Notes under the pieces: model-generated
Databases searched by the model: none
What the model saw: only the letters and a program-made list of their open reading frames with translations
Told to the model about the DNA's origin: nothing
In this document: in pieces, positions 11,690 to 46,400 of the stretch
Layout: each line of letters opens with the position of its first letter
Numbering within the stretch: the first letter of the stretch is position 1
Translations under genes and position numbers: made by a program
DNA from: Lytechinus pictus
Lineage: Eukaryota
DNA length: 64,000 nucleotides
Direction: 5' to 3'
Assembly: GCF_037042905.1 (NCBI RefSeq)
Contig: NC_087253.1
Coordinates: 25,296,001-25,360,000, forward strand

Positions 11690-12195
11690 GGGTGGCTGAG
11701 TAACGGTGTAAGGTGGTTTAACCGTGTATAAAGATGACGGACTAACCGTGCAAGGATGACGGACTAATAACCATGTAAGAATGGCGGACCAAGGTGTAAG
11801 GAATAAGGATGGCGGACTAACCGTGTAAGAATGGCGGACTGACGGCGTAAGGATGGCGGACTAAGTTGTAAGGATGGCGGACTAACGGTGTAAGCATGGC
11901 GGACTAACGGTGTAAGGATGGCGGACTAACGGTGTAAGGATGGCGGACTAACGGTGTAAGGATGGCGGACTAACGTTGTAAGGATGGCGGACTAACGGTG
12001 TAAGCATGGCGGACTAACGGTGTAAGGATGGCGGACTAACAGTGTAAGCATGGCGGACTAACGGTGTACGGATGGCGGACTAACGGTGTAAGGATGGCGG
12101 ACTAACAGTGTAAGCATGGCGGACTAAGGTGTAAGGATGGCGGAATAATGGTGTAAGGATGGCTGACTAACGGTTTAGGGATGGCGAACTAACCG
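11690..12195. repeat. 22-bp minisatellite (GGCGGACTAACGGTGTAAGGAT)n, ~20 copies, just 3' of the homeobox stop codon
   Basis: Directly visible tandem units; homogeneous at 11870-12130 and degenerate at the edges. Confidence 0.95.
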
Positions 12196-12237
12196 CCTAA
12201 TGGGTGGTGGACAACCGGGATTTGGTAAGGGTAATCT

Positions 12238-15200
12238 TTAATAGTAGGTTGGAACCCAGTCATTGGGTCTATAATAATCATAACCGCCTTCTCGGTAGTA
12301 AGTCTGGCGATATTCACCCTGATAATGACTCTGGCTGTATTCACCCCGGTAATAATTTGTGACGTAATGTGGAAATTCTCTCCCATTTGTGACGTAATGG
12401 GGACATTCTCTCCCGTTTGGTGCTGTGTGCCCACCAACGTTGCAATGGGCGGAGCTTCCCAAATGCAAGTGACTGGTGTCAGTTGCAGCGGGTGCGGTGT
12501 GCAGAGTGATATTTGGGGCGTGGCTTTGGTGACTTGAGGTCAATTTGTTGTCCAATGAAGCGGCGAACTCGGCAGCGTTGTAGAGCATCGTCAGCGGATT
12601 GGTTGATTGGGTTGCTGCGTGTGGATTTTCGCTGCCATTGCAACCATTCTGAGTAGGGTTGGCGTTTCTAGGCGGCGCTCGCTCGTCCGGAAGACGCCGA
12701 TTTAAACTCCTACGTCGGTTTGAAAACCAGTTGTGGATTTGGGTTTTCGTCAAACCAGTTTTATCTGCAAGTTCCATCTCGAAAAGAAAAGAAAAAATAG
12801 TGAATATCAGTTGTGAAAGGAAAACACAAATAATTATTATTTTGAAAATCAAGTCAGGTCAATCATATAGCCTACTTCTACAACGACTCAAATAACTTTT
12901 ATCGTCCAACTCTAATTGCAATTACATAAATATTACAAATGTCTTCTTACCTTTTGTTCTTTCTTTGGAAATTTTGTAACGCTTTGGAAGTGATTCATGA
13001 GTGTTGCTCGTTGAGACGTTGAGAGGCTGTGCTTTATGCGATATCCCGATGGGCAAATGCTTTTTGGAGGCGGAAACCTTTGAAAAAAGAGAGAGATAAG
13101 AGAGTGATCACCATAAGGGTGGTCATGGCCGCGATGATAATCATAGGATGGTGGAGTTGCCAGTTTTGGTAGTGCTTCTGCTGATGGTGGTGGTGGTAGC
13201 ACTAGCAATGATTATGATAGTGATGGTGGTTATGATTATGATGATGACGATGACAATGATGATGTTGGTAATGAAATTGATGATGATGTTTGTGATGAAC
13301 GGTGGTGGTGAATGATGATAATGATGATGATGATGGTGATGATGATGGTGGTGATGGTGGAGTTGCCAGTTGTGGTAAAGTGCTGTTGATGGTGGTGTTG
13401 GTGATAATAATGATGACAGTAATGATGATAGCGGTAATTTCAACGATGATGATGATGATGTTGATAATGGTAAGGGTGGTGGTGATGACGGTGGGGATGG
13501 TGGTGTTGATCAGGCTGGTGGTGGTAATAATGACGATAATAAATAGTATTCACATGCAGACTCATTCAAAATAAAGACAGTATGCCAATATAACACTCAA
13601 TCCAACGGGGGGTGCTGGTGGTACCATGATAGTATGCATTTTGCAGAAATTTAAGCAAAATCACCTTCATTTTCCTAGCGAAACCTTTTTTCCGTCAAAT
13701 TTCTCGTGACCAAAATAACCTTCATTTTGTAGTGAAAACCTCATTTATTCATTTGATCATTTTTTTGCTTATCAATTTTAAACCAGCACACCCTGTTAAA
13801 AAAATTCCAGAGCCATGGCCAATCCAACCAAAAGTTTTCGGAAATGAAGATTTCAAACCATTTGATAATAATTTTTGATGCACCACTTATTTTTGCTTTA
13901 CATAATTATGCTTCTCTGCATAATAAAACCAATTTGACAGTAACCTTCCCTCTCCCATATGCATGATTAAATTAAGGGGCGGATCCCCAGGATTAACAAA
14001 AGGGGGGGCACATGTTCTCGAGGAAACTTTGTCAAAAAAAAAAAAATTGGTGTGACTTTCAAAGGATGGGGGGCACACTTGTGTAAGAACGGCAAATTTA
14101 CATCATTTTTTTTTCATTATGACCCTCAAGGGGGGGGGGCACGGGCCGGATGTGCCCCACCCCCTGGAACCACCACTGATTAAATTTATGCTATTATGTC
14201 TGTCAGTTTTGACCCGCTCGTTTCGCATTCTCTAAATTATTACCTTTAGTCAACTGTTTTCAATCATAAAGGGACATTGGTTTAACTCACCTCTCACGAA
14301 TCCGATACTTGGATACTGACGTTAGAGGGCGTTTTAGATTCCTCTTCTGTATTTCAACAATGCATTCGTCCCATACGCCAATAAGATCAGAACCATCACG
14401 AAATGGTCCAATCTGTCAAAGAAATTAGATAATTATTCCTAAGTTAATAAGTATAAAAATTAAATCCTGACTTATCAATAATAAACAGGTCCGCGGAACG
14501 ATTTTGAAAGTGCGGGGGGGGGGCTGACCCTGCAAAAAACACAATCAGATGGTAATTTTTACGTTTTTGTTCACGGTTTTTGAAAAAGTGTGGGGGGACT
14601 GGAACCACCTAGCCGCCCCCCCCCTGTTTTTGCAGCCCCTGATAAAGGCAGTTAAAAGCTGCTACAAGTGGAACGCCTTTGTCAGTCTCGCCTACATCAC
14701 GCTGCATCTTGGAAAACAAGATGGATAATACTTTTTCTTAAGGGAAGATAACATTTAACCTTGTCTTCATTATCGTTTACATAATTATACAACCTTCACG
14801 TAATAAGAATCTAGTCATATCATTTACATAATGGGTGTACCCCTGTTACATATTCACCCTCGAATAGTTTCACAGAGTGCTGAGCAAAAAAAAAAGACAC
14901 GCATTTTTCCTTATCTGTTTTGCCGGTTGTTCCGCTGAACTATTGCTTCACTACATCTGCTCTTTGGGAGAAAAAAAAATAAAAAGTTTGAAAATCCCTC
15001 TAAACAAATCGATTTCATGAACACCGAGCACGAAGTCCCTCACTTGGACTCTGACTATGTCAAAGAATATACCTTATTATTTTCAAACAAAATGTAAACC
15101 TACCTCGATCAAATGACACGCATGCTGGTAATTCCCCTTCGTCTTCGCATTCATGATCTCGACACGGAGGAGGAGCTCGATCTCGCGGTAATGCTCGATG

Positions 15201-18200
15201 AAGCCCGCGAACACGCCTTCGAACAGCGAGTCAATCTCCGCCCATCGACCCGCCTCCATAAGTTTTTTGCACACGGTACACGCGAGGCTGATGACCGTGT
15301 GATCGGGAGGACTGTATTTATCTAGTGAGATGTTGTACAGCAGAGCGTCCATGTATCTTTGAACGTCAATATTTCTTTCTGTTAATTTGGAGAGAAGTGG
15401 AGATAAGCACTTTAATAACAATATTACGATTAACATTCAGTCAAAATCTAAAAATCTAGCTTTTTCCAAAAAGGGGGTTTGACCAAGAAATTTGACAAGC
15501 AAAAAAAAAAGGAAAAAACATGAAAAAAAGCTTTAGTCCAAAATGAAGGTTATTTACTTATTTTGGTACCGAGAATTTTTTCTACAAGCAAAAAATAAGA
15601 AGGGTTCACTATAAAATGAAGGTAATTTGGGGTTGGCTCCAAAATGTAGGTCATTATTTTTGTTTACTTGGCAGCCCAAGGGGGTTAAACTCCCTACCCC
15701 CTCCCCGTAAGTCCACCACTGTTCAGTCGTTTTATAACGATTTACAAGTAACGTTAAGGGGGGGCGATCTATTCTTGTCATACAGTGTTGATTCAGTGAT
15801 ACAAGGCCTATCTATATATCTTTTTGATGGTCTTCCTTTTTGTCCTCCCTACCTTTTATTCCCCCGCCCCCTTTTTTCCCTCTCTTTTATATTTTCACTC
15901 TGGTATAAACCACATGGGTGCATGGCCTGATATGTCGAGCGAATTGAGAGCTACGCGACCTATTCTTTCATCTCTCTTCCTTTTTCTTCCCTCTTCATTC
16001 TTTTCACTCCGTGAAAGTATATAGAGATGTTTGCCCCCAGCAGGGGCGGAAATCTCTCCCAAAAGGTAGGGGGGACACAGGGGCGGATCCAGCCTTCGCC
16101 AATAGGGGGGGGGCGGAAATTTGTTTCAGCCATATTTTCCCCGAACGGCAGCTCGACGATGATTTGTGTTTGTTTCTTTGAAGGGGTAGTCCTCATTAGT
16201 CACTTCTTAGCTTTATTCTTATAAATTGATATATAATATCATAATCCTTATTTATATGATGCGAGCGTGAAGCGCGAGCTAATTTTTTGGAAATGTTATG
16301 TATTTTTTCCTAAAATTTGAACATTCTGGGCAATGTTTGTTATCTTGAAAAAAATGTGTATGCAACTTACTAATTACTACAAACGCAAAGCGCGAGCAGA
16401 AATGAACTGATGGAAAAGATACCTGTTAAAGACTGCGTGCAGTTAGCATTTAACAATCAAATAATGTGAGCGCGAAGCGCGAGCTGATTTTTTTTGGACA
16501 TTTTCACCTACAGAATGAAATTCTAAGCACTTTTTGTAACTCAAGCAGAACAGGTATATAAATGAGTAGACAATTGATGTGAGCGCGAAGCGCGAGCGGA
16601 ACATTTCGAGATTTAGTCCTATAATATTTACTGAACGAGACACTCCATTCATGTTTTGTAAATCATGAAAAGAATGAGTATTAATAATGCGAGCGCAAAG
16701 CGCGAGCAGAAAATTTTTATATACGTTTTGAACTGGTACCTGTTAAGGACTGCTTGCACTTAGCCATGAAGGCATTACATATTTCAACAATCAAAAAATG
16801 CGAGCGCGAGCTGAAAATTTTTGAAAATTTCTAAAGAAAGAATGGAAAATTTTAATCAATTTTTGTAATCGTGAACAGGATAGCTATATAATTCAACAAT
16901 TGATGCGAGCGCGAAGCGCGAGCATAAAAAAAAATCGAGATTTAGACCTAAAAATTGGCCACTCTGTTCATGTTTTGTAAACAGCCATAGGTTGATCGAG
17001 GGCTTTTTACCGTGTTTAAATGAAATAAATCAATCAAAATCCATGTTTTGTAAATCATGAAAAGGATGAGTAATAGGGGGTCTTCTTACATTAATAATGC
17101 GAGCACAAAGCGCGAGCAGAAAAATTTTGATATTGTGATCTGAAACTGGATAATGATTTAAATAGAGAACATGTTGAGTATTTGAATAAACATGCGCGCG
17201 CGTGTTTCATATTTAGACCTAGAATCTTGGCATTCTAAATACATCTGTAATCATGAAAATCATGAATCGATCTGAAAAAAGAGTCAATTACAGCTTTATA
17301 TTTCAAGCACTTTGTAGGAAAATTATAAGGTGGACATGGATCGCACTTAAAAAGAAGAGTTAAAATTTTCATTATTATTACTTTGAGTTTTGACATAGGA
17401 CCGGGACATCCTTACAACATGTCATGAAAATGATGACAATCTTCCTATTCCTCTTGCTAAGCGCGAGATGAAACAAAAGGGACAATTTAATTATTGAATT
17501 AAAATCATATTTATTAATGCCTAATGAGGGCGCGAAATCTGATATTATGGCATAAAAACTGGACATTTCACTTTTGTAATTATGAATAGGATGCATCAGT
17601 TAATATATTTTGAACCATTAATGCGAGCGCAAATCGCGGGCTAAAATTTTTGATAAACTGTCATGAAAAGGGGGATTTTAAGTAGTTTGTTGTATAATCA
17701 ATATTGAAACATACATAACTCGGCAATCAAAATGCAAGCGTGCAGCGCTAGCTGATACGTCTTGACAATCAGACCTAAAAACGGATATTTTGACAACTTT
17801 ATGGAATACACGAAAATAATAGGTACCTGATAAATCAAAATTTGCGAGCACGCAGCGCAAGCAGCAAATGTTGATAAAATTATTTAGACCAAAAAACTGA
17901 CATTTTTACAGAGCACTTTTTAAAAATCAACTTGTAAATCACACAAAATAATGAAAGTTCGATTTCCGAGGTGAAATATGTTTTGTATATTGACTTCCAA
18001 ACTTGATATTTGAGCTCCATATTGAACAAGATATGTAAATCACCTAACAGGCAATGCGAGCGCAAAGCGCGAGCGAAAATTTTATATAGTGGCACGAAAG
18101 ATTCTTTTTATTTTCCAAGTCTTCCCCTCATCTTATTTTATGCACTCGTCGTCCTTCTCTTCTTTTTCTCCTCTCTTTTCCCTCCTTTTTCCCTTTTTCC

Positions 18201-19006
18201 TTCTTTCTTTCCCTTTTTTTTCGTTTTTGCTCCGCCAATAGGGGGGGGGGGGGCCTCGGCCCACCTGGATCCGCCTATGGGGACAAGGGGCGGGAAAATT
18301 TGTCATGAAAAAAAAAGGTTATCATCCCAAAAGTACGGTCATCTCGTCCCAAAATACATGTTTTATTTCGATTTAGAATGATGTATTTCTTACCATCATA
18401 AAAGACAAAAAATAGTAGGGGGGACATTTGATATTGTGTCCCCCCTACTATTTTGAGTAGGGGGGACACGTCCCCCCTGTCCCCCCTGGGATTTCCGCCC
18501 ATGGCCCCCAGTAACACAGCCCCTGAATATTACATATATATGCCTTTCCTCGGCCAAAACCAAGACCAGTTCTTATTGAAATATACTTGTCAAACTAGCT
18601 GCATAACAGACAGATAATAACGATGTCAATTCTTGTTCTTACGACGAAAATATGGAGAAAGATGAACGAAAACAAGACATGACAAGGGCAGCGGTCGCCA
18701 AACGTGTACCTATTACTTGTACTAAGGCCTAACTGGCCCGAATTCTCGAAGGGTGGCTAACTTAGCCCACGGGGGGATAGTTAGCCCAGTGGGCTAACTT
18801 AGCACGGGCTAAGTTAGCCACCCTTCGAGAATTCGGGCCATTTATTTAGGTCTACGAAGCTTTCGATCCATATATACTCAAACATTCATGCTTACAGAGG
18901 ACCGCCACGGCGCGCCGTTAATTTTAATTTATGTAGATTAAATTGGCATAAATGTAAGGACTTGTGCGAATTTCTGTTGTTAGTAGTAATGCAACTTACC
19001 TGCCAT
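12238..19006 (-). CDS. Divergent SIX-domain + homeodomain transcription factor, ANHX (anomalous homeobox)-like, 356 aa, 5 coding exons
   Basis: complement(join(19000-19006,15104-15378,14291-14412,12951-13077,12238-12777)); all GT-AG, phases 1,0,2,0, 1071 nt open. Protein: MAERNIDVQRYMDALL..SPPDHTVISLACTVCKKLMEAG..LLRVEIMNAKTKGNYQHACHLIE|IGPFRDGSDLIGVWDEC..KRPLTSVSKYRIRER|FPPPKSICPSG..SQRATLMNHFQSVTKFPKKEQK|MELADKTGLTKTQIHNWFSNRRR. It aligns to the SIX domain (RPL..V.KYR.R.KFP.P..I) and to a SINE-class homeodomain (ELA..TGLT.TQ..NWF.NRR). Confidence 0.9.
13135..13545. repeat. Degenerate (GAT/GGT)n trinucleotide microsatellite in intron 3 of the homeobox gene
   Basis: Runs of gatgat/ggtggt; explains the spurious poly-His and poly-Met ORFs. 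Confidence 0.9.
13974..14178. mobile_element. hAT-like MITE; related copy at ~60905-61155
   Basis: aaggggcggatcc...ggaaccaccactg flanked by the 8-bp TSD ATTAAATT (13966-13973, 14179-14186). Confidence 0.7.
16041..18503. mobile_element. hAT-like MITE interrupted by a nested 2.2-kb hAT-like element (16078-18279)
   Basis: Outer termini CAGGGGCGGAAATC and GATTTCCGCCCATG with perfect TSD GCCCCCAG (16033-16040, 18504-18511). Inner termini CAGGGGCGGATCC and GGATCCGCCTATG with GGGACA duplicated. An uninterrupted outer copy lies at 31093-31351. Confidence 0.85.
18735..18839. mobile_element. 105-bp foldback MITE in intron 1 of the homeobox gene
   Basis: GGCCCGAATTCTCGAAGGGTGGCTAACTTAGCCC and its exact reverse complement GGGCTAAGTTAGCCACCCTTCGAGAATTCGGGCC. 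Confidence 0.8.
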
Positions 19007-19400
19007 CTTAGTTGATTCCATTTTATTCGTCCTTTGCGTACACGTTTTGTAGAAAGAGATAGAAATCACACCACCAACCCGTAGTTTGCAAACTCTCACA
19101 TGTAGGATGCGAAGTTACTGCTATCACAGCCACACCAACGAAACCACTCGGAAACCGACCGACGGTCTGCCATTGGAAACAGCGCTATCGCTTTGGTCGG
19201 TTTGGAGTCATTGTGACTGAGACATAAATGCATCACATTCCTCGGTTACATCGTACAGGTGTTTTTATGGCGGTGGCCGCGCAGTGACTCCATTGTTCCG
19301 CGGTGAAATCTACGATTGTGGTTTTCGCGCATTCGAATTCCGCACGCGCGCGTTTACACTAATTATCGATTTCGGCTTTATAAAGATGTCGTCTGCCCAT
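19007..19400 (-). promoter_or_regulatory. Probable 5' UTR and proximal promoter of the ANHX-like gene
   Basis: Unique, CpG-enriched island (gcggtggccgcgc, cgcacgcgcgcg) directly upstream of AAGATGGCAG|gtaagt. Confidence 0.45.
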
Positions 19401-25299: not shown

Positions 25300-26345
25300 A
25301 GATATAAAAATAAATAGTGAGAGCGCGAGCAGAAATTTTTAATACACGTTCTGGCCTGATCGAAAAGGGACCTGTTTAAGGACTGTTTGCAGTTACCCAT
25401 GAAAAATATACATATTTCAACTATCTAATAATGCGAGCGCGAAGCGCGAGCTGATTTTTTTTTACATTTCGACCTCGGTAAAAACTGGACATTCTAAGCA
25501 TTTTTTTGTAATCATGAACAGCATAGTGAAGTAGGTTTCACGGTACACCAAGTATCTTTCTTGGGTGTTGGTCATGAAAAAAAGACCACCAAAACTCGAT
25601 GTTTCGACAAGTGTGTTCTTGTCGTCCCAGGACTGGCCAGGAGAATGAGAACAACAAGAACACACTTTTCGAAACGTCGAGATTGGGTGGTCCTTTTCAT
25701 GACCAACACATGGTGTACCATGAAACCTACTACACTATTATTTTTCGCCATGGAAACATTCAGAAGTTACATGAACAAGATATGTATATCCCTATCCAAT
25801 TGATGCGAGCACGAAGCGCGAGTGGAAACAAAATTGAGATTTCAGACCTAAAAATGGGACATTCTAAGCACTTTTCTAATCATGCACACATAGGTATATA
25901 ACTATACGGCAGGGGCCGCCGAATGGTTTTCAAGGGGGGGGGGGCTGAGCCAAAAGTGTGTGGGGGGCTGACCATGCAAAACATCACAATTATATGGTCA
26001 TTTTTAAATGTGGGGGTGGGGGCTGAAGCCCTCCCCGCTTCCGCGGCCCCATTACGTACAATTGATGCGAGCGCGAAGCGCGGAAATTGAAATTCAGACC
26101 TAAGACAGGACACTCTATTCATGTTACGTAAATCAGGAAAAGGATCTGAAATTGGGTATCTTCCTATATACATTTATAATTTGAGCGAGAAGCGCGAGCA
26201 GAAAAATTTTGACATTCTGATCTGAAACTTTATAATTCAAGCATGCTTGAAAAAAAGCTGCGTATCTGAATAAACATGCGTGCACGTTTTTAGATTTATA
26301 CCTAGAATCTGGGCATTCTAAATATTTTTTCTCATAAAAATCAGT
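25300..26345 (+). mobile_element. Fragment of the GCGAGCGCGAAGCGCGAGC-bearing hAT-like element (family of 16078-18279)
   Basis: Same periodic motif and shared spacers (agacctaaaa, tagacctagaatct, ggcattcta). Confidence 0.7.
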
Positions 26346-26938: not shown

Positions 26939-29900
26939 TTAATTCAGCAGGGGATTATTTCGTTGCGTTAAATCGTCATTCATGGAGTAACCGAAGAGTT
27001 TGAAATCGGGGGCGTAAATCTCGTACAATTTAAGGAGATATTCTTTCGAAATCGTTTTATAATACTTGGTGAATATTTCTTCGGTATTGCTCGTGTTCCT
27101 GGATGATTCTCTGAAGTGAACAATGTGATCGATCTTCAGGTATCTTAAGATGTTCTCCGAGTCTTCTTTCCCAGTTTCCAACTTACCAATGTAATCATAA
27201 TGCATAGTACACGGAAGAACCATTTGATAGATCGGCTTCCAGTGTCCATCCATGTTGTTCTTCGCCTCTTTATCTGTGATAAACCGAACAAACTCCGCAA
27301 ACGTCACGCCGACCCCAGTTTCAAGTTCCTCTTTGGATGGGTTGTCCCTGTAGCGTTCGATAATTCTTCGTCCGTAGGACTTCTGGAACACTTTATTGTC
27401 CTCTTCAAGTTTGTTCCTGTACGCGGAAAGGATGCGCGCAAGAGGATCACGTACGAACATGAAGGTGGTGTAATTACTATTCAGACGGTATTTGATCTCC
27501 TCCGGACTGTACTCATCGAGTTTCTTCAAGCTCGGATCGTGCGCCCTCCATCCGGGTATTTCCTCAACAGTTTTAAATTTTCCCTTCAGAACGAGAAACG
27601 CGCTCTTCCAGTGAGTCGACCCGACCTTCGATATAAAGCCATACATTATTCTGTACTTATCGTCGACAATGTAAGGCCATAGCAATCCTTTCTTATTATG
27701 TATGATGTGAGTCAGATTTAATTTCAGTGATGTGTTCTTGCTACACTCGTCCCGCAGGAGCTGTTGTCGGAGAGCTTGTCTCTCTAACCAGGCACCAACT
27801 GATACATCCGTTTTTCCTTCATCCTTAAGTGAAACCTGGAATTTAATCATCAAGTTCATGCAAGTCGTAATGGACAGCACCAATGAACGTAGAGGGCGTG
27901 AACACTTTAAGTGCTGACGTCGTCTACTTTCATTGGTCTGCGAAAGATTTCCTCACAACGCCATGACCATGAAATACAAAATAACAATTATTGAAAGATT
28001 GGTGACTGACAATATTAATTATATATCAATATCCATAGGCCCTGCAACCATATACGTTGTATATCAATATTTCCTATATCCATATGTTGTGTATCAATAT
28101 TTCCTATATCCATATGTTGTGTATCAATATTTCCTATATCCATATGTTGTGTATCAATATTTCCTACATCCATATGTTGTGTATCAATATTTCCTATATC
28201 CATATGTTGTGTATCAATATTTCCTATATCCATACGTTGTGTATCAATATTTCCTATATCCATATGTTGTGTATCAATATTTCCTATATCCATATGTTGT
28301 GTATCAATATTTCCTATATCCATATGTTGTGTATCAATATTTCCTATATCCATATGTTGTGTATCAATATTTCCTATATCCATATGTTGTGTATCAATAT
28401 TTCCTATATCCATATGTTGTGTATCAATATTTCCTATATCCATATGTTGTGTATCAATATTTCCTATATCCATATGTTGTGTATCAATATTTCTTATATC
28501 CATATGTTGTGTATCAATATTTCCTATATCCATATGCTGTGCATCAATATATCCTATATCCATACGTCATGTGTCCATATACCTCCTATATCTATACTTT
28601 ATCCTAACGTAAGTCCTCTACGGCCTAAATTCATACGTTATACGTCTACATCTATACGTCGTATATCCATACATTGTACATCAATATTTCCTATATACAT
28701 ACGTCTCATATCACAGTTATATTCAAACGTCCTATATCTATACGTATTTATATGTCCAAACGTCGTATATACCAATGCGTCCTATATCTGTACGTTCTAA
28801 CGTATATCCTATACGTCCAATATCTACATGCTTCTTGTATTCATAAGTTGTATATCAATACTTCTTATATCCTTACTTCTTATATCCATACGTTGTATAT
28901 CCACACATCCTATATCTACACGTCCTATCATAATAAGTCCAATATCTACATACTTCTTATATACACAATTTTGGTATATCAATATTTCCTATATCCATAC
29001 GATTTTGCCCAATATTCATACGTCTTATATCAACAGTTCTATATCTATGTGTCCTATATCCATGCGTATTATATCCATAAGTCATGTATCAATTATTCCT
29101 ATCCATGCGTCTTATATATGTACGTCCTATAACATATATCATATACATGTACGTCCAATAACATACCTCTTATATCTATGTTGTTTATATGTATATTAAT
29201 ACTTTTTGTATCAATACTGTCTCATTTTATCTATACGTCTTATATTAATTAGTCCTATCTCCATACGTTGTATATCCATGCGTCCCACAGCTATACGTCC
29301 TACGTCTGAATGTATATAATTTACTTCTAATAGTAATATATACATGCTTACTATAAGTTGCATATCAGTACTTCCATTATCCATACGTCTTGTATCAATT
29401 CGTCCAAAAGCCATACGTACATGGTTTAGCCATACATCGTATCCATACGAGAATTCTCAGCGGAGAGTCAGATGCATAATATATAGGATCTTATATCACA
29501 GATCAGAGACCCATTTCATAAAACTCGTTATAATAACAAATTTGCAATAACAGTTAAAAGCTAGTGAAATCCTTCACCCTGATTGGCTGATGGTAAATTT
29601 GTTATAAAAACTGTGCATTTGTTACTGTAACAAGTCTTTATGAAACGTTTCCAACAAAGTCATGAAAGTAAGGAACAATATGCTTACATTTGCCTTTAGC
29701 TCTTCATTGTCATTCGATCGATTACCGTTGGAGCCGAGTTCAATAGAAATGTCTGAAAGACCTGTTAAATGAGACAAAGTGGTAGATGATAAAGATAAAA
29801 TAATAATGATGATGTATATAGTTTATAATAGAATTATAAAAGAATTACATTTGGTAATTTATCAGTGCTTAAATTGACTTTTTATCAGATGGGAATATCG

Positions 29901-32900
29901 AATGTTTTCAGCTCGTGCTCCGAGCTCGCATTATTGATCTCCATGATTAAAAAAAATGTATTCAAAATGCCCAGATTCTAGGTCGAAATCTAAAACACGC
30001 GCACGCATGTTTATTGAGATAGGCAGCTTGTTCTTTATTCAAAAAGTGTTTAAATTATCCAGTTTTAGATCAGAATATCAATTATTACCTGTTTGCGCTT
30101 CACGCTCGCATTACTAGGAAGATACCCAATTACCCATCCTATTCATGATTTACAAAACATGAATAGAGTCCCGATTTTAGGTCTAAAATCTTAATTTTCT
30201 TCCCCTCGTGCTTCGCGCTCGCATCAATTGTTTAGTTACATACCTGTCCCTGTCATGATTACAAAAAGTGCTTAGAATGACCATCTTTTAGGTTGGAATG
30301 TCTAAAAATTTCAGCTCGCGCTTCGCGCTCACATTATTTAATTGTCGAAATATGTATCGTCTTCATGGCTAAATGCAAACAGTTCTTATCAGGCAAGAAC
30401 CTTTATTATAAATTTCTGCTCGCGCTTCGCGTTTGCAGTAGGCCGTAATTATCTAGTTACATACGCATCTTGTTCAGGATCACAAACATTGCCCAGAATG
30501 TTAACTTTTCAGGACAAAATACATGAAAGTTCCCCCCAAAAAAAATTAGCTCGCGCTTCACGCTTGCATATTTTATATACGGCTTATGAGATTATTTTAT
30601 ATTTATGTTATTTTATAACAATAAAGCTAAAACCTGTGCCCCCCCCCCCCCATTAAATACATGAAAGTTCCCCAAAAAAATTAGCTCGCGCTTCACGCTT
30701 GCATATTTTATATACGGCTTATGAGATTATCTTATATTTATGTTATTTTATAACAATAAAGCTAAAACCTGTGCCCCCCCCATTAAATCAAATCCTAGCT
30801 ACGCCACTGCTCCACATAGAAAGACAACTGCATTATATCACGCGTAACATGTATACTGCATAGGCCTTGCATATAGGCATTGTACTACTAATAACGTTAT
30901 TCTCCGTGATCCGATCTGGCTGAAATTTGAGTAAGTGATTTTTAAAATATTGTGTGAAATCTGGAGGAAATTGTGTTGTATGGAAACTGCGTGCATTTGT
31001 GCCAAAATAACCCGGTCTCGTGCCGGACTCGTCGCCGTACCATGTCGAGTTTCGGGCCCCTAGTCCAAGTCTGAGTCATGAACCTTCGAGCCCATGGGCA
31101 GAAATCTGTCCCGAAAGGTAGGGGGACCAGGGGCTGGAAAGTTTGACAAGCAAAAAAAAAAAAAACTGGTTTTCAACCAAAATGTAAGGTCATTTAGTCC
31201 AAAATACATGTATTATTTCGATTGTGAGTGATGTATTTTTCTCCATCATAACAGACCAAGAATAGTAGGGGGATATTGTGATATTGTGTCCCCCCTACTA
31301 TTTTTGGTAGGGGGGACGCGTCCCCCTGTCCCCCTGGGATTTCCGCCCATGTTCGAGCCCGAGTCCGAGACCGAATCCGGCATAAACGGTCTCGAGTCCG
31401 AGCCTGGACTCGAGTCACACGTACACACTGATCTGAATAGTATTCAGATCAGTGTTCACTGGGTTAGAGTTAGGATTGTAATAGAGTTTTTGGTTCAGAA
31501 CAATGTAAAGATTACGATTAGGGTTTATTTAGTTTTGAAACGGAACACAGGTGCGACTAAAGAGGTAAATATCAATATTTGATAATATACGATCAATCAT
31601 AATATAGTGAGCATGAAATGAGCAACGCGTGTTTATTGTGAAACAAACATACAGTGTGTCCAACAAAAAGGAAACATGTTTTCAGAGATACATTTCACAA
31701 TTATTCAACGTGTTTTACTAATTTGATATTTATGAAAAGAGTCAAATATCATCTTTAATATGAGACCAACAGCTTAGCAAAACATTCACGCATGGCAGTT
31801 TACAAACAATGAGTATAAGGGCATGTCAGAAATGATTTGCGCAGAAACTCGCCTAAGGATCTGAATCGACTTTCATTTCAGGGATCAGTGAGAGAAACTT
31901 TACAAAGAATACGAAAGAAATGCGAATGAGCCAATCATCGAATAAGCACCTCTGTTTCATTATGAATCAATCTTGTCAAATTTTTCTGCGCAACCCGATT
32001 TTAACATTGAAATGTCAAACTCGTCTTGCTCATTATTATTGCGTTAAGTTTTCGTGACATAATATTATTAGCTATCAAAATGTAGAATTATTGAATTGTA
32101 TGATGATGTAAATGAATATCATAACTGATTTGCCTTTGAGGAAAACCGATGTGGGAATCTTCGTTTTTTTAGGACGCAATGTACAATAAAATTCGTAATG
32201 TTTGAACACATCTGAGGTGAAAGCAATTGATTAATCCCTTGGTGCTTCATAATTAAGCTCAAACAAACTTTTTTTCTCCCGATTGACATTTCATCCATTT
32301 TCATACAAAGTACACAAATCAATACATTATAAAAAAAACAATGAATATGAATACAATTCTTAAATTATGTGTATTGTAAATGTGTAAAACCCAGAAAGCA
32401 AGAAAAAAAGAAAAGGGTGATATATGATATTATTTTCTTAATATTATGTCAAATCTATCGCAAAATTGAATTTTTATGATAACAATGTCGACATTGTTGC
32501 TCGCTGGCTTCGCTCCCTCGCAACTTTTTATGAATTTTGCACGATACGCATTATCTGCCCCCTCAAAACTTTTGGCTCAATACACCACTGCCCTTCTAAA
32601 CAGTAAGCGTCAATGTGCTGCGTTTGTTGTTTGTTTTCTTTACAGAAATATCAGAATACGTCAATATAATAAATATTATCTTCATCGACATATTAGCAGT
32701 CACATTGAACACGCGGGAAATACAAACAAAATATCGCCTTATATAGGCTTAGTCTATAGGCTTATTTTAAGAAAATGGGATGTACAAAGCAGAGTTCCTC
32801 GGCCGCTTCTCTCCTCCCCCCTCCCGAGCGAAATTGAATGTCTATATATGGTCAAATTTTATGGGGAAAAAAGTGTAGGAAACAGATTCTTACTTTCTTG

Positions 32901-35989: not shown

Positions 35990-38900
35990 TTATTTTGCAT
36001 ATTCATGTATATACATTCTTTTTAACTTAGATTTAAATGACGTAATTGTTGTTGAGTATTTAATTCCATCGGGGAGATTATTCCAAATGCGTGGGCCATA
36101 ATGCCTTAATGAATTTAGGAGAATTTGTGTTTTGACCTTGGGATAATGAAAATTATTACTTGAGCGAGTATTGTGACAATGAACGGAATTGTTTATTAAA
36201 AACATACGGGATATATTAAAAGGAATTATGTTATGAATAGTACGAAACATCACAGATGCTATCTATAATTTATGAATATCATATATATTAAGGGTATTGA
36301 GATTAAAAAACAAAGGTCGTGAGGGAGCTCTAAAAGGGGAGTTGGTATATATTCTTAAAATTTTCTTTTGCAATTTATGAAGGGGTTCCAATTTTGTTAT
36401 TCCAGCATTCGCCCAAATAATATTACAATATTGAAGATAGGGTGGGGAAAGACAGTTATATATCATAAATAACACCTTCTGTGGCAAAAAAATTGCGAAG
36501 TTTAAAAAGAATACCAATATTTTTTGAGATTTTATTAGCTAAAATAGAACGGTGGCTGTTGTATGACAGTGTATCATCTAAAGTGATTCCGAGAAACTTG
36601 GTTGTTTTTTAACAATTCAAGAGGATTTGATTCAAAAATATTTTAACATCCGAAATATCATGTTTTATATGTTCTTTACTAATATACATAACAGTTGTCT
36701 TTTCATAATTGATTACTAATTCATTAGCATGGAACCAGTTTATAATCTTAATTAATTCTTCATTTGTATTCTTAATAAGTAAATTAAAATCACAATTGGA
36801 CGCAACTAAATTTGTATCTTCGGCAAAAAGGACAAAATTAAAAAAATGAGAAACATTACATAAATCATTGATATATATCAAGAATAAGAGCGGGCCCAGT
36901 GTGGAGCCCTGGGGGACTCCACAATGGACACTCTCATGATGAGAAACAGCATTATTATAAACAGTATAATGAAAACGATCAGTTAAATGGAAGTGGAAGA
37001 GCCGTGGTGTAGTGGTTCTGACTCTCGCCTTGTAAACAGAGGGTCGTGTGTTCGAATCCCACCGCGGTCTAGCGTCCTTTGGCAAGGCGTTAATCCACAC
37101 TTTGCCACTCAGGTGCTAAATGGGTACCCGGTAGGATGCGAAAGATATTGTATGTTTGATTTTGCCAGCGCCATAATGAGGCTGCGATGAATGCAAGGAA
37201 TGCTCCCCAGGGAGTGGAAATTGTGTACTTTTCGTGCGGGATTGAAATGAATCCAATGACCGGGGTAATAATATGCTGTAACGCGCTTTGAGCCATTCTG
37301 GGAAAAGCGCTTTATAAAAATTGGTTATTATTATTATTATTATTATTATTAAATAATCTTTAAACCATTCAAGGGCAATGCCACGAATACCAAAATGAAA
37401 TAGTTTACCAAGTAAAATATTATGGTTGATAACATCAAAGGCTTTGCTTAAATCGAGAAAAATACCGAGTGTATGTAGATTATTAGCCATATTATTTAGG
37501 AGATGATCATTAAGGTCGATAAGTGCAAGCTCGCATGAGTAATTTGATCTAAAACCGTATTGTGAATTATTTAATAGATTATTTTTATCAATGTGCCGTA
37601 TAAGCCTATTGTACATTAACTTTTCTAAGATTTTGGAAATACTAGGGAATAAAGTGATAGGTCTATAATTTGAAAATATATGCAAGTCCCCTTTCTTAAA
37701 TACTGGAATAATTTTCCCTATTTCCATGTCCTTTGGGAATCTACCTGTTAAAAATGATACATTAAAGATATGTGTTAGGGGTTTTGTTATGAAATAAATT
37801 ACTTTTTTAATAACACACTGACTAATTCCATCAAATCCCATGCTTTTACTTGATTTAAAAATATGTTTTACTATTTCAATAATTTCATGTTCATTTGTAG
37901 GATATAAGAATATAGAATTTTGACATTGGTTTGAGAGATAAGACAAAAAATTATTAGAACGCTGGGGAATATTTGATTGGATATTGGTAGCTTTATTAGC
38001 AAAAATGTATTAAATTCTTCTACGATAATTTGATCATCAGTTATTTTAACACCATCTTTCAGGAAATAAGTGTTTAAATTATGTTTATTTGTAAAAAGAA
38101 CCTCATTAATTATTTTCCACAACTTAGAAAGATTATTTTTATGTTTTTGCAACAAGTTACTATATTATTGTTTTATTGGCCTTTTTTAGAATTAGGTTCA
38201 ATTTATTTCGGTAAGATTTAAACTTCCTTTCAATTGTTTGATTTCTACTTTTGCAAAAACGTTTATATAAATTGTCTTTTTTATGTATGCATTTGAATAA
38301 AGAGTTTGTTATCCATGGCTTGCGTATTTTTTGCTTTGTTTTTGTTCTTATTGATACACAGTTACTGTCGTACGCAGTTTTAAAATAGTGCATGAATTTA
38401 CAATAGGCATTATCAATATCTTTGCATAATACAACTTCATCCCAGGAAATATTAGATAAGTCATTTTTCAGATAATTTAAAGAAGCTGTTTCTGTCTTAT
38501 GTATGGTGGGAGGTATAATATTATTGGTCTTTTGTTCGCAATACAGATTATTTATTTGGAATATGGGGAGATGATCAGTAATGTCGCTGTAGAATATCCC
38601 TGTCTGAATTTGAGAAGTATGTACGTTAGTAATTAATGTTGTCGATTAAAGTTGAAGATTGGGTGGTAATCCGGGTGGGCTTATCTATTAAAGGACGAAT
38701 GAATTATTACATAAAATATTAACAAAATCATTTATGTATTTATTGGAATCAATGTACAGAAAATTTATATTAAAGTCGCCCATAATCATGATAATCTAAA
38801 TGCACTTATTTTCATGCGACAATTTGTCAAGACATTCATCAATATTTTCATTAAAGCCTTTGATATCTACATGAGGATCTCTATATATGACACCAACCAC

Positions 38901-43400: not shown

Positions 43401-46400
43401 GCGCCGCATCTACAGTGATCGCTTATAATCAAAGTCCAAGGAAACGGGTGTCAAATCAATTACCGACCTGAAAACGACATGATTCTTTCCGATCCGTTGA
43501 GTCGACTTCCTAATCCCAAGGAAGCATGCGATGTACCGTCAGGTGTCAGAGTTAAATCCATCTGCTCTGAGGAAAAAGATTCGCATATGCGATCGACTTA
43601 TTACTCTTCGGAAAACACAAGAGGACAGAACTTCAGAGAGAAACGGCTAATGATCCAATTCCCAGATCATTATGACAGATTTGGCCTAAGTTGGCCTGAA
43701 ACAATCCAAGAGTTATTGAAATCCCTTAGGCAGTATTGGTCGTATAGAGATAACATCGGATTATCACATGGAGTACTCTTCACGGGAAGTCAAGTCATCA
43801 TACCGAAGTCACTGAGGAATAATATCCTTGGACAGCTTCACCTAGGACACATGGGAATCGAAAGTACCAGACGACTTGCTCGTGAGACAGAGTTCTTGTC
43901 AAACATCACAACGAGGACATCGACCTGTTGATAAAGCAGAGTGAAACATGCCAGAAACATCAAGCAAGGCAGCATTAGAAAAGAAGTGGAATATCAAGCA
44001 CATTACTTCTTCTCCACACTATCCAAGATCAAACGGATTAGCTCAGAGGATGGTTCGTACAGTCAAGAATCATTTGACAAAATGTTCTCAGACTGGCCAA
44101 GACAGTCAACTAGCAATGAACCTGAGAGCAACACAAGTCGAAAGTAACTTGATATCACCAGCAGAAATGTTATTTGGTAGACCCATCAGAACCACATTAT
44201 CAAGTCACTATTTCTCGAGAGATTCTACTACCACTGATTTTCTCTTGAATAGGCAAGACAATGTGAAGGAAGTGCATTATCGACATGCAAGATCTAATCT
44301 ACCACCTCTGCATGTAGGACAGCCAGTGAGAGTTATACATCCAAGATAACACATTTGGATACCAGCTAAAGCATCCAAAGTCTGTGAGGAACCCAGGTCT
44401 TACGAAGTATCAAAGCCGAGCGGAGGAATCTTGAGAAGGAACAGATCACACGTGAGGAAAATTCCATCCACCATCCCCACTCCAAAGCAGGGCTCGAAAT
44501 TAGCGGTTGCCCGGGTGACATTGGCAACCAAAACTGCCATCATGGTTGCCCGGATGGCAACCAAGAAAATTCCGTGGTTTTTTCTCAAAGAGAATAAAAA
44601 TCTCTTAAATTTTGCAGCAAGCAAAATTGCTTTTCCAGTCAAAAGTTTACAACTTCTGGATCAGGAATATATCTTTAAAGATCACATTGGCACAAAGTTT
44701 TAGCTCAAAAAGATCGCCCAAATCTAGCACATGAGCCTGCCAATGACTTCTAAGATTGACTGCCTGTCTGTCAAATCCTCCATAAGAACCATAAGCTTAC
44801 ATTTTGACATGATACAAGTCAATTGTTGCAAGTTTTAAAATGCAATTTACAGGAGGCCTTTTCCGTGGTACTGATTCGTCACCACATTTTCTACTTTTGA
44901 AAATATTAAATAGATTAATAACACAACCATACACATCTCAATGTTCCAAAAAGACCTTCTCCTTCTTTACATTGGTCAACAGAGGTTTTTCATTTTTGGC
45001 ACTTTAATGTATCAGAATTGTTTAATTCAAATCGTAAAGAATAAAGATAACCCACTCAATTAATTTCTCATAATCAGAATACCCTCAAAACATTTGTAAT
45101 TTGTTTTCCTATGACGTCGAATTGAAAAGTTCTGTTCAGAGTTTTTTGTCAGAATCCAAGATGACCGTCAAGGTGGCGGCCAAGGGACAATATTCAAGTT
45201 TTCAGAAGATCAAAATAAATTCATTCAGTATACGACTCCAAGATTGAAAATGTGTAGGTTAGAAAAAATTATCAATATGTTGAAAAGAGTGGTAAATATA
45301 ATGACAATATAGTACATTTAAGTCTGTAAAATGTAGTAAAAACAACAACTCAATTTCTTAATAATTGTATATTATTATATAGGAAAGTTTTCTAGAAAGT
45401 TTCAAGACAATTCCTTTATTTTCCTTAGATATATGGTAAATCAAGTATTTTGCAAATTTCCATTTTTTGGGGAACAATTTCAAAATGCACTTTTCTTATT
45501 AAGATGTCAGCCGAATTACCTTTGAATTACCTATGAATAATATCAACTTGTAGAAAATTTATTCATCTTTCATATGACACTAATTTTGTGTTCGAAGATA
45601 AACCTGATTTAGGAATACAGGCCATAGATTCAAAATACAGATAAAGTGGGGGTAGCTTCGACATATTCCTTTGAGTTGTGTATTGATGTGTAAGAACTTC
45701 ATCTCTATTACCTGCAGTGCAAGTGTATCTTATAACTGTTTCCAAGAGACTTCATTAAATAAATTTCTTTATAATGTAACAGAAACACCTTTTTTGCCTT
45801 TACATCCTTCTAAATCACATTTCTATTACGATGCACATTACGGTTTGTTAGTCATACCAACACAATCGATGCGAGAGGCTGATCCAAGCTATTGTATTAT
45901 TTGAATGACATGCCATTCATCACTTTGCAATCGTTTTCATGGGTGTGACTGCCACACCGAGGTTGCTTTTTGGCATCACTTTAGCACAAAATCGCTTAAT
46001 ACATTCAGCATATTTTCCTTCTTTCTAAAGCAAATGAAGATACTTATGTTGGCATGAAGCCTGCCAATATTCTCGTTGATACATCCTCTTTCATATCGAA
46101 TGTTGAGATTGTGAATTTATTACTAACATTCATGATAAATTTGATCAATAACAGTGCATGTGCATTTTTAAACCAAAAACATACAAATTTTGGCCAAAAG
46201 TCTTAATTCTTTCAAAAACTATATCAACCGACTTTAAATCAAAGAATAAAGGGAGTGTAGTAAATTCTACCAACAAAATAATATATAATTTCGCATTTTA
46301 TTAAGGCCTATCTCCATTTTCTGGGTTGAAAATGTGACAATATACATTTGTGTATCCAAGTCTCCGATATGCAGTAAAAAAGCTAAATTTCTGAAAATTG

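What the first reader, a model, noticed from the sequence alone, without database searches (positions are those of the whole stretch)
12238..19006. Intact ANHX-like (anomalous homeobox) SIX-related gene in an apparent invertebrate deuterostome
Seen: five phase-compatible exons give a 356-aa protein with a full but divergent SIX domain fused to a SINE-type homeodomain; the ORF track shows only fragments of it. Knowledge, recalled and not searched: Six1-6 have FPLPRTIWDGE plus a class tetrapeptide (ETSY/QKTH/ETVY) and WFKN, whereas human ANHX has approximately PPAELVTLAGRLC, ACRLLE, NPPPPSLCPEG and one extra residue between helices 1 and 2. This protein has PPDHTVISLACTVC, ACHLIE, FPPPKSICPSG and the same extra residue, and it lacks WDGE. 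Inference: it is an ANHX orthologue. I know ANHX only from vertebrates, so this would make it an old fourth branch of the SINE class dating at least to the deuterostome ancestor.
Basis: partly seen in the sequence, partly recalled or inferred. Interest (0 to 1): 0.88.

Follow-up and report, generated by a model that had tools for sequence, protein, structure and literature searches.

The report
Sea urchin counterpart of ANHX homeobox gene
This sea urchin gene is intact and encodes a SIX-domain plus homeodomain protein that lies outside the three classical Six families, in a fourth, old animal family whose amniote member is the poorly understood ANHX gene.

Summary
A five-exon minus-strand gene with GT-AG introns encodes 356 aa, or 361 aa from an in-frame ATG 15 nt upstream at 19021. 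It is 98% identical to a Lytechinus pictus RefSeq model named "SIX6-like".

- **Domains:** that near-identical protein passes Pfam SIX1_SD and Homeodomain. Its predicted fold (pLDDT 92) matches only the SIX1 crystal structure significantly.
- **Tree:** a SIX domain + homeodomain ML tree splits 100/100 into Six1/2, Six3/6 and Six4/5 against a fourth group. That group holds the urchin genes, amniote ANHX, and genes from a hemichordate, amphioxus, molluscs, a nemertean, a scorpion, a priapulid and cnidarians (including the published "csSix-X").
- **Introns:** two SIX-domain introns are shared across all ten fourth-group genes mapped. The urchin's canonical Six genes lack them.
- **Specific link to ANHX:** only urchins and ANHX share a homeodomain intron at 31/32 (phase 0), a one-residue loop insertion with a VT motif, and a PP motif.
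- **Weak points:** sequence trees alone do not resolve urchin+ANHX (80/55). No microsynteny was found and no spliced reads were found.

The ANHX interpretation is supported, and the family is older than the deuterostome ancestor. I found no paper describing invertebrate ANHX relatives.

The parts
19000..19021 (-). Coding part of exon 1 (MESTKMA + first base of the Glu codon, phase 1).
   Evidence: in-frame ATG at 19021, donor G|gtaagt after 19000. The L. pictus model starts MESTKM. Diadema coding exon 1 is also 22 nt, phase 1.
15379..18999 (-). Intron 1 (3.6 kb), rich in repeats.
   Evidence: Nine copies of a GCGAGCGCGAAGCGCGAGC-core repeat lie here.
15104..15378 (-). Exon 2: N-terminal helix, PP motif and the first about 60% of the SIX domain. 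It ends ...ACHLIE| with a phase-0 donor.
   Evidence: SIX1_SD profile positions 8-65. The intron position is shared by all fourth-group genes mapped.
14291..14412 (-). Exon 3: C-terminal part of the SIX domain (..DLIGVWDEC..KYRIRE[R]), with a phase-2 donor.
   Evidence: SIX1_SD profile positions 76-106. The phase-2 intron in R-x-R-x-[R/K] is shared by all fourth-group genes mapped.
12951..13077 (-). Exon 4: FPPPKSICPSG motif, homeodomain N-terminal arm, helix 1 and the loop with one extra residue (..FQSVTKFPKKEQK|). The phase-0 donor lies between homeodomain positions 31 and 32.
   Evidence: The homeodomain intron at 31/32 is shared only with Diadema and amniote ANHX.
12691..12777 (-). Start of exon 5: homeodomain helices 2 and 3 (MELADKTGLTKTQIHNWFSNRRR), with Ser at position 50.
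   Evidence: Homeodomain 26 bits, Homeobox_KN 29.6 bits on the exon-5 piece. W48, F49, N51 and R53 are invariant in alignment A2.
12238..12690 (-). Rest of exon 5: C-terminal tail with conserved blocks (STNPLTML.NAAEF, a duplicated NGRE.PHYVTN, and a Tyr-rich end ..DWVPTYY) and the TAA stop.
   Evidence: blocks conserved with S. purpuratus P0001. A 30-nt x 2.2 tandem repeat lies at 12355-12419.

Best explanation
The locus is an intact, single-copy, five-exon protein-coding gene of a Lytechinus sea urchin. It encodes a transcription factor of 361 aa (356 aa from the second ATG). The protein has an N-terminal helix, a divergent SIX domain, an atypical 61-residue homeodomain and a Tyr-rich tail.

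It is not a Six1/2, Six3/6 or Six4/5 gene. It belongs to a fourth SIX-domain family found in cnidarians and bilaterians, referred to here as ANHX/Six-X. Within that family it is the echinoid counterpart of amniote ANHX.

**Shown here:** the gene structure, the domain content, the fold, the family split, the shared introns and the shared indels.

**Inferred mechanism:** the protein binds DNA through a complete homeodomain, because W48, F49, N51 and R53 are kept. Position 50 is Ser (Ala or Thr in relatives) instead of the Lys that defines canonical SIX proteins. The N-terminal arm carries CPSG instead of WDGE plus the class tetrapeptide. It should therefore recognise a different site from the canonical SIX target. 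The SIX domain would act as a protein-interaction module, as it does in SIX1-EYA, but the partner is unknown.

**Speculation:** a germ-line role is possible. Human ANHX is expressed in oogonia and drives germ-cell genes, and jellyfish csSix-X is expressed in gonads.
For: **Gene model.** All junctions are GT-AG and the reading frame is open. The protein is 98% identical to a 361-aa L. pictus RefSeq model, with conserved blocks in S. purpuratus, and Diadema has the same five-exon structure.

**Domains.** P0002 scores SIX1_SD 44.1 bits (cut-off 27.4) and Homeodomain 41.1 bits. The PDB sequence search gives SIX1 4EGC at 4e-15 across both domains. The AlphaFold model has pLDDT 92.2, and Foldseek's only match at E<=0.001 is 4EGC.

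**Family.** In a phmmer search of 1.84 billion representatives, the hits after the urchins are PPPxSICPxG proteins and ANHX. ML trees give a 100/100 split from the canonical SIX families, and the split also appears for the SIX domain alone and the homeodomain alone.

**Rare characters shared by the whole fourth group.** These are an intron after ..LLE| (phase 0), an intron in R-x-R-x-[R/K] (phase 2), a one-residue insertion in SIX-domain helix 1 (LAGxxC), and PPPxS[IL]CPxG instead of PLPRTIWDGE. The three canonical Six genes of the same genome encode the SIX domain and homeodomain in one open frame.

**Characters shared only by urchins and ANHX.** These are a homeodomain intron at 31/32 phase 0 (lizard, bird, platypus, Lytechinus, Diadema), a +1 loop with VT, PP six residues before helix 1, and Cys in AC.L[LI]E.

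**Tree support for the pairing.** The 49-row tree pairs urchins with ANHX (80/55). In the 91-row set, the tree constrained to urchin+ANHX is 5.7 lnL better than the one the free search found.
Against: - Single-domain trees do not recover urchin+ANHX. With the SIX domain alone, urchins sit with cnidarian members (82/73). With the homeodomain alone, they are unresolved at the base.
- AU tests do not reject urchin+Saccoglossus (p=0.20) or ANHX+amphioxus (p=0.42).
- Both lineages are long branches, so attraction between them is possible.
- Loop length is labile. Montipora has +1 while its sister Desmophyllum has +3.
- There is no microsynteny. Sauropsid ANHX lies between DEPDC5 and a 14-3-3 gene, whereas urchin DEPDC5 and the 14-3-3 genes are on other contigs.
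- Amphioxus and Saccoglossus carry the other subtype. An exclusive urchin+ANHX subfamily therefore needs an old duplication with reciprocal losses.
- No ANHX from fish or amphibians appeared among the hits.
- Transcription is not shown. Three RNA-seq runs gave no exon reads and no junction was seen.
Confidence: 0.8

Rival explanations
1. The gene belongs to the fourth (ANHX/Six-X) family but is not specifically closer to ANHX than other invertebrate members are. The family would be a single orthology group with one gene per genome. The 31/32 intron, the +1 loop and the PP motif would then have arisen in parallel in echinoids and amniotes.
For: - Every genome sampled shows one member, and the urchin genome has only one.
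- Species-tree-like constraints are not rejected.
- The SIX-domain-only tree puts urchins with cnidarian members.
- Loop length changes within one coral clade.
- Saccoglossus and amphioxus, which are closer relatives of urchins and vertebrates respectively, have the other subtype.
Against: This needs the loss of the 44/45 intron and the gain of an intron at exactly the same codon boundary and phase twice. It also needs a parallel two-residue loop shortening to the same VT-containing loop and a parallel PP motif. The concatenated tree favours urchin+ANHX. Under this rival the urchin gene would still be an ANHX orthologue in the broad sense.
Confidence: 0.15
2. The gene is a fast-evolving, lineage-specific duplicate of Six1/2, Six3/6 or Six4/5. 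It groups with other divergent sequences only through long-branch attraction.
For: The fourth group consists of long branches and the canonical group of short ones. phmmer scores to ANHX (60-78 bits) are only slightly above those to canonical SIX proteins (up to 74 bits). NCBI names the orthologues SIX6-like and SIX2-like.
Against: - The 100/100 split appears in the combined and in both single-domain trees.
- Two exactly shared SIX-domain introns are absent from the canonical Six genes of the same genome.
- The group shares a helix-1 insertion and the PPPxSICPxG motif.
- The gene is not in the Six cluster on contig C7.
- Orthologues occur in urchins as distant as Diadema.
Confidence: 0.02
3. 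The locus is an untranscribed relic or a decaying gene rather than a working gene.
For: No exon reads were found in three RNA-seq runs, each sampled to about 25%. A degenerate copy of the tail with six stops exists on contig C31.
Against: The frame is open across five exons and all splice sites are canonical. The protein is 98% identical between two Lytechinus genomes. The SIX domain, the homeodomain and tail motifs are conserved in S. purpuratus, and the exon structure is conserved in Diadema. DNA-contact residues are intact. Contigs of run X2 fall inside exon 2, exon 5 and the 3' region but not in unique intron sequence. Germ-line-restricted expression would explain the silence elsewhere.
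Confidence: 0.03

Closest known systems
Amniote ANHX (anomalous homeobox, formerly LOC647589)
   Same: - SIX1_SD plus homeodomain architecture.
- [FN]PPPxS[IL]CPxG in place of PLPRTIWDGE.
- No Lys at homeodomain position 50.
- One extra loop residue with a VT motif.
- PP six residues before SIX-domain helix 1, and Cys in AC.L[LI]E.
- Three introns identical in position and phase, including the homeodomain 31/32 intron.
   Different: - Only about 25-30% identity over the two domains.
- ANHX has YNWFANYRRR where the urchin has HNWFSNRRR.
[quoted passage not shown]
- The C-terminal tails are unrelated, and ANHX has more 3' exons.
- No shared gene neighbours.
- Tree support for an exclusive pairing is weak.
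Cnidarian csSix-X / Nematostella XP_001633591 and their bilaterian relatives (Saccoglossus, amphioxus, molluscs, priapulid, scorpion, nemertean)
   Same: - The same fourth clade (100/100).
- The same two SIX-domain introns.
- The same PPPxSICPxG motif and helix-1 insertion.
- A non-Lys residue at position 50.
- csSix-X was published as an unclassifiable Six gene with an Irx-like WFAN helix 3 (PMC3340352).
   Different: - Most of these have a three-residue, TALE-like loop extension with PYP.
- Most have helix 3 reading TWFANARRR.
- The homeodomain intron is at 44/45, and Saccoglossus has none.
- They lack the PP motif and have a Trp in the N-terminal helix.
Canonical SIX proteins (Six1/2, Six3/6, Six4/5; SIX1 structure 4EGC)
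   Same: The order is SIX domain then homeodomain. The overall fold matches: 4EGC is the best and only significant structural match. The KYR[IV]R linker and the helix-3 residues W48, F49, N51 and R53 are kept.
   Different: - No WDGE and no ETSY/QKTH/ETVY tetrapeptide.
- Ser50 instead of Lys50.
- An extra loop residue.
- Three introns inside the region that canonical urchin Six genes encode in a single exon.
- The gene lies outside the Six cluster on contig C7.

Membership tests
SINE/SIX class | SIX domain immediately N-terminal to a homeodomain | tested here: met
   P0002 (98% identical to the window protein) scores SIX1_SD 44.1 bits against a cut-off of 27.4, and Homeodomain 41.1 bits. The window's separate exon pieces hit SIX1_SD positions 8-65 and 76-106, each below threshold on its own.
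SINE/SIX class | SIX1-like three-dimensional fold | tested here: met
   The AlphaFold model has pLDDT 92.2. Foldseek against the PDB gives 4EGC_A (SIX1) at E 9.4e-07 over 183 columns, the only match at E<=0.001. The global TM-score is low (0.39) because the two domains are oriented differently.
SINE/SIX class | Lys at homeodomain position 50 (WFKNRRQR) | tested here: not met
   The window has WFSNRRR (Ser50). S. purpuratus has Ala, Diadema has Thr and ANHX has Ala. PMC2959044 describes K50 as characteristic of the class.
Six1/2, Six3/6 or Six4/5 | PLPRTIWDGE plus the diagnostic tetrapeptide ETSY / QKTH / ETVY at homeodomain positions 3-6 | tested here: not met
   The window has FPPPKSICPSGYRIKH.
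Six1/2, Six3/6 or Six4/5 | Falls inside one of the three clades in a SIX domain + homeodomain ML tree | tested here: not met
   A 100/100 branch separates all canonical sequences from the group that holds the window protein. The result is the same for each domain alone.
ANHX | SIX domain + homeodomain with an NPPPxSLCPEG-type motif, no WDGE, and a non-Lys residue at position 50 | tested here: met
ANHX | Gene structure: introns after ..LLE| (phase 0), in RxRx[R/K] (phase 2) and at homeodomain 31/32 (phase 0) | tested here: met
   All three are identical in the window, Diadema, Rhineura, Empidonax and platypus. The third was not found in any other fourth-group gene mapped.
ANHX | 61-residue homeodomain with one extra residue between helices 1 and 2 (loop ..VT..P) | tested here: met
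   Caveat: one coral member also has a +1 loop, so this character can recur.
ANHX | Exclusive clade with ANHX in sequence phylogeny | tested here: inconclusive
   The pair is sister at 80/55 in the 49-row tree. The constrained tree is 5.7 lnL better in the 91-row set. The pairing is not recovered with single domains, and the alternatives are not rejected (p = 0.20 and 0.42).
ANHX | Conserved gene neighbourhood | tested here: not met
   Sauropsid ANHX lies between DEPDC5 and a 14-3-3 gene. The urchin DEPDC5 is on contig C2 and the 14-3-3 genes are on C1, C2 and C16, not on C9. Microsynteny is not expected to survive this evolutionary distance.
ANHX | Germ-line expression (human oogonia; PMC11850904) | not testable with these tools
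   The tissue of the available RNA runs is unknown, and no exon reads were found.

The most novel reading that the evidence does not exclude
The textbook count of three Six families is incomplete. A fourth SIX-domain family (ANHX/Six-X) dates at least to the cnidarian-bilaterian ancestor. Its ancestral form had an Irx/TALE-like homeodomain with a three-residue loop extension, a WFANARRR helix 3 and an intron at 44/45. A duplication before the deuterostome ancestor produced an ANHX-proper lineage with an intron at 31/32 and a +1 loop. That lineage survives only in echinoids and amniotes, possibly with a conserved germ-line role. The human orphan ANHX would then have a tractable invertebrate model.
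Probability: 0.4. Interest if true: 0.75.

Novelty: new member of a known kind. Interest (0 to 1): 0.65.

Why it matters
ANHX was named "anomalous" because it fitted no homeobox class, and it was traced only to placental mammals (PMC3141429). Later it was merely listed with the SIX class (PMC5928047). Its function is only beginning to be studied, in human germ-cell induction (PMC11850904).

This locus shows three things:
- Sea urchins keep an intact gene with the same three diagnostic introns as ANHX.
- ANHX, the cnidarian "Six-X" oddity and many unnamed or misnamed invertebrate genes form one old family beside Six1/2, Six3/6 and Six4/5.
- Many members of that family join a SIX domain to a TALE/Irx-like homeodomain, which bears on how the SINE and TALE classes relate.

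In practice it offers an experimentally accessible organism for studying ANHX function. It also corrects database names such as "SIX6-like" and "SIX2-like".

Tried and rejected
- **RNA evidence.** Neither run search listed a holder on record as RNA. Laying three RNA-seq raw-read runs of the species label (X22-X24) and the contigs of X2 on 11900-15500 gave reads only on intronic repeats. X2 contigs lay wholly inside exon 2, exon 5 and the 3' region. No junction was seen, so splicing remains unconfirmed by reads.
- **Synteny.** DEPDC5 and 14-3-3 genes flank sauropsid ANHX but are on other contigs in the urchin. Neighbours in Diadema, amphioxus, Nematostella, the oyster, Priapulus and Desmophyllum share nothing obvious.
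- **Profile search.** A search with an urchin+ANHX alignment returned almost only mammalian ANHX. It did not reveal more invertebrate, fish or amphibian members.
- **Missing loci and a partial mapping.** P0015 and P0009 were not on record. The Empidonax mapping stopped after residue 221, so only its first four introns are reported.
- **Second paralogue in the urchin.** The search found only the three canonical Six genes and a TGIF-like TALE gene.
- **Literature.** Searches for "Atale" and for SINE/TALE hybrids found nothing relevant.
- **Not attempted.** No complex prediction with EYA was run, because I make no binding claim.
Full report
**1. The observation**

The region was read and the model rebuilt base by base. 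On the minus strand the exons are 19000-19006, 15104-15378, 14291-14412, 12951-13077 and 12238-12777. They join in frame through four GT..AG introns with pyrimidine tracts, giving 1071 nt, which is 356 codons plus TAA.

An in-frame ATG lies 15 nt upstream in the same exon, at 19021, and extends the protein to 361 aa. This start is used by a Lytechinus pictus RefSeq model named "homeobox protein SIX6-like" (P0002), which is 98% identical to the window protein along its whole length. It also makes coding exon 1 22 nt long and phase 1, exactly as in the Diadema setosum orthologue.

A partial Strongylocentrotus purpuratus model ("SIX2-like", P0001) conserves the homeodomain and several tail blocks. 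The window therefore comes from a Lytechinus genome of 812 Mb in 368 contigs, on contig C9. I cannot say which species. The gene's existence is thus already in automatic annotation. Its classification is not.

**2. Domains and fold**

The separate exon pieces hit Pfam SIX1_SD only weakly: profile positions 8-65 at 14 bits and 76-106 at 16 bits. The exon-5 piece passes Homeodomain. The intact near-identical protein P0002 passes both curated cut-offs, with SIX1_SD at 44.1 bits against 27.4 and Homeodomain at 41.1 bits.

Against PDB sequences the best match is human SIX1 (4EGC, 4e-15) across both domains. That alignment shows one extra residue between homeodomain helices 1 and 2. An AlphaFold model of residues 1-225, built on a 29-sequence alignment, has mean pLDDT 92.2. 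Foldseek's only PDB match at E<=0.001 is 4EGC.

The model also predicts a long N-terminal helix (residues 3-26) before the SIX domain. The DNA-contact residues W48, F49, N51 and R53 are invariant across the alignment. Position 50 is Ser, not the Lys typical of the class.

**3. Relatives**

A full HMMER scan of 1.84 billion representatives with P0002 ranked the hits as follows:
- Diadema (208 bits).
- A set at 60-96 bits that all carry PPPxS[IL]CPxG instead of PLPRTIWDGE.
- Canonical SIX proteins at up to 74 bits.

Cluster look-ups identify the second set in two parts.
- **Invertebrate members:** a Saccoglossus "uncharacterized protein"; Branchiostoma; the molluscs Saccostrea, Nucella, Gigantopelta, Patella, Argonauta, Mizuhopecten, Mytilus and Sinanodonta; the nemertean Lineus; the scorpion Centruroides; Priapulus; and the cnidarians Craspedacusta, Nematostella, Montipora and Desmophyllum.
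- **ANHX members:** a block named "anomalous homeobox protein" from a turtle, lizards, birds, the platypus, marsupials and placentals.

All ANHX proteins tested pass SIX1_SD.

**4. Phylogeny**

An ML tree (LG+C20+F+G4 PMSF, 91 rows, 195 columns of SIX domain + homeodomain) has a 100/100 branch. It separates 54 canonical sequences from 37 sequences made up of 3 urchin, 11 ANHX and 23 other fourth-group proteins. Among the canonical sequences, Six1/2, Six3/6 and Six4/5-type proteins form the expected groups. I left out the partial P0001, multi-homeodomain proteins, isoform duplicates, and most of the near-identical Six1/2 and Six3/6 rows.

The split recurs with the SIX domain alone (100/100) and the homeodomain alone (100/98).

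Inside the fourth group resolution is poor:
- The 49-row tree pairs urchins with ANHX at UFBoot 80 / SH-aLRT 55.
- In the 91-row set, the best tree constrained to urchin+ANHX is 5.7 lnL better than the tree from the free search (p-AU 0.67).
- The SIX-domain-only tree puts urchins with cnidarian members (82/73), and the homeodomain-only tree leaves them basal.
- AU tests do not reject urchin+Saccoglossus (p=0.20) or ANHX+amphioxus (p=0.42).

Sequence alone therefore places the gene firmly in the fourth family but not firmly next to ANHX.

**5. Rare genomic characters**

I mapped ten annotated proteins exactly onto their own genomic loci (scripts). With the window gene, that makes eleven fourth-group genes compared.

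Two introns are shared in position and phase by every fourth-group gene examined. One lies after ..LLE| (phase 0). The other lies inside the last codon of R-x-R-x-[R/K], just before PPP (phase 2). The genes are those of the window, Diadema, Rhineura, Empidonax and platypus ANHX, Saccoglossus, Branchiostoma, Nematostella, Desmophyllum, Saccostrea and Priapulus.

The three canonical Six genes of the same urchin genome sit together on contig C7 at 19.59-19.97 Mb. Each encodes the whole SIX domain and the homeodomain in a single open frame. These two introns are therefore family markers that do not depend on the tree.

The third intron splits the family:
- The window, Diadema and all three ANHX genes have it between homeodomain positions 31 and 32, phase 0, exactly 17 residues before W48.
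- Nematostella, Desmophyllum, the oyster, Priapulus and amphioxus have a phase-0 intron at 44/45.
- Saccoglossus has none.

The same partition is drawn by three further characters:
- the helix 1-2 loop, which is +1 residue with VT in urchins and ANHX, against +3 with PYP in most others;
- a PP motif six residues before SIX-domain helix 1;
- a Cys in AC.L[LI]E.

Loop length is not fully reliable, because Montipora has +1 while its sister Desmophyllum has +3.

**6. Interpretation**

In the broad sense the urchin gene is very likely an ANHX orthologue, because it belongs to the same old family and I found a single copy per genome. The urchin genome has no second member. A search with the Saccoglossus protein found only the canonical trio and a TGIF-like gene.

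The exclusive characters make it likely that the urchin gene and ANHX share a more recent origin than either shares with the amphioxus or hemichordate genes. That would require a pre-deuterostome duplication with reciprocal losses. The alternative is parallel relocation of the intron and parallel shortening of the loop. I cannot decide between these with the genomes I could reach.

**7. Function**

Nothing is shown directly here. The complete homeodomain with conserved contact residues implies DNA binding. Ser/Ala/Thr at position 50 and the replaced N-terminal arm imply a specificity different from canonical SIX proteins. The SIX domain implies a protein partner.

Human ANHX is expressed in oogonia and promotes germ-cell programmes when over-expressed (PMC11850904). 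Craspedacusta csSix-X is expressed in gonads and at the manubrium opening (PMC3340352). A germ-line role for the urchin gene is a reasonable guess. It would also explain why three RNA-seq runs of unknown tissue gave no exon reads. In run X2, contigs fall inside exon 2, exon 5 and the 3' region and not in unique intron sequence. This hints at transcription, but no junction was crossed.

**8. What is known**

- Zhong and Holland (PMC3141429) introduced LOC647589, now ANHX. They said it fits no class, found it only in placental mammals, and reported it lost in mouse and rat.
- Dunwell and Holland recorded the name (PMC5094009).
- Paps and Holland listed ANHX under "SIX class" in a table (PMC5928047).
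- Hroudova et al. described csSix-X and Nematostella XP_001633591 as unclassifiable Six proteins with an Irx-like WFAN helix 3. They discussed a fusion or an ancient hybrid gene and did not link them to bilaterian genes (PMC3340352).

I found no paper that reports invertebrate ANHX relatives or a fourth bilaterian Six family. The searchable library is incomplete, so prior description elsewhere cannot be excluded.

**9. Verdict**

It is a new member of a known kind, of real interest to homeobox evolution and as a model for an unstudied human transcription factor. The caveats are weak sequence-tree support for the exclusive pairing, no synteny and no junction reads.

Noticed in passing
window 11729-12193: A 22-bp tandem repeat (TAAGGATGGCGGACTAACGGTG, 20.8 copies, 84% matches) starts about 45 nt downstream of the stop codon, probably within the 3' UTR. 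Contigs of run X2 cover parts of it.
   Followed up: partly
window 16261-18074, 25433-26199 (+) and 29911-30702 (-): A dispersed, array-forming repeat with the near-palindromic core GCGAGCGCGAAGCGCGAGC. It has 20 copies at up to 3 mismatches against 0 expected, spaced about 100-530 bp (mostly 100-220 bp). Nine copies lie in intron 1 of the gene.
   Followed up: partly
G000:C31:496259-496717 (loci L012, L017, L019): A degenerate copy of the C-terminal tail region of this gene (47% identity to residues 195-355) with six in-frame stops. It is a pseudogene fragment on another contig.
   Followed up: no
window 26942-27883 (-): A single-exon 314-aa ORF with a full Sulfotransfer_2 domain (197 bits), probably a carbohydrate sulfotransferase gene about 8 kb from the homeobox gene.
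   Followed up: no
window 36612-37946 (-) and 43479-43928 (+): Reverse-transcriptase fragments (RVT_1) and a weak integrase zinc-binding match. These are retrotransposon remnants.
   Followed up: no
G000:C7:19591411-19968244 (loci L001-L006): The three canonical Six genes of this genome lie within about 380 kb on one contig. Each has its SIX domain and homeodomain in a single open frame. This looks like a retained Six gene cluster.
   Followed up: partly
L021 and L022 (Empidonax and Rhineura ANHX loci): In a bird and a lizard, ANHX lies directly downstream of DEPDC5, and in the lizard it lies upstream of a 14-3-3 gene. The human gene is reported at 12q24.33 (PMC3141429). The gene may have moved during amniote evolution.
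   Followed up: no
P0004-P0013, P0020 and relatives (loci L020, L024-L028): Most invertebrate members of the family join a SIX domain to a homeodomain with a three-residue loop extension (PYP) and helix 3 reading TWFANARRR, as in Iroquois/TALE proteins. They hit Pfam Homeobox_KN over its full length at 47-63 bits.
   Followed up: partly
G000:C2:35429113-35507364: DEPDC5-type (IML1) exons appear twice in opposite orientation about 70 kb apart. This may be a duplicated or inverted-duplicate DEPDC5 locus, or an assembly of two haplotypes.
   Followed up: no
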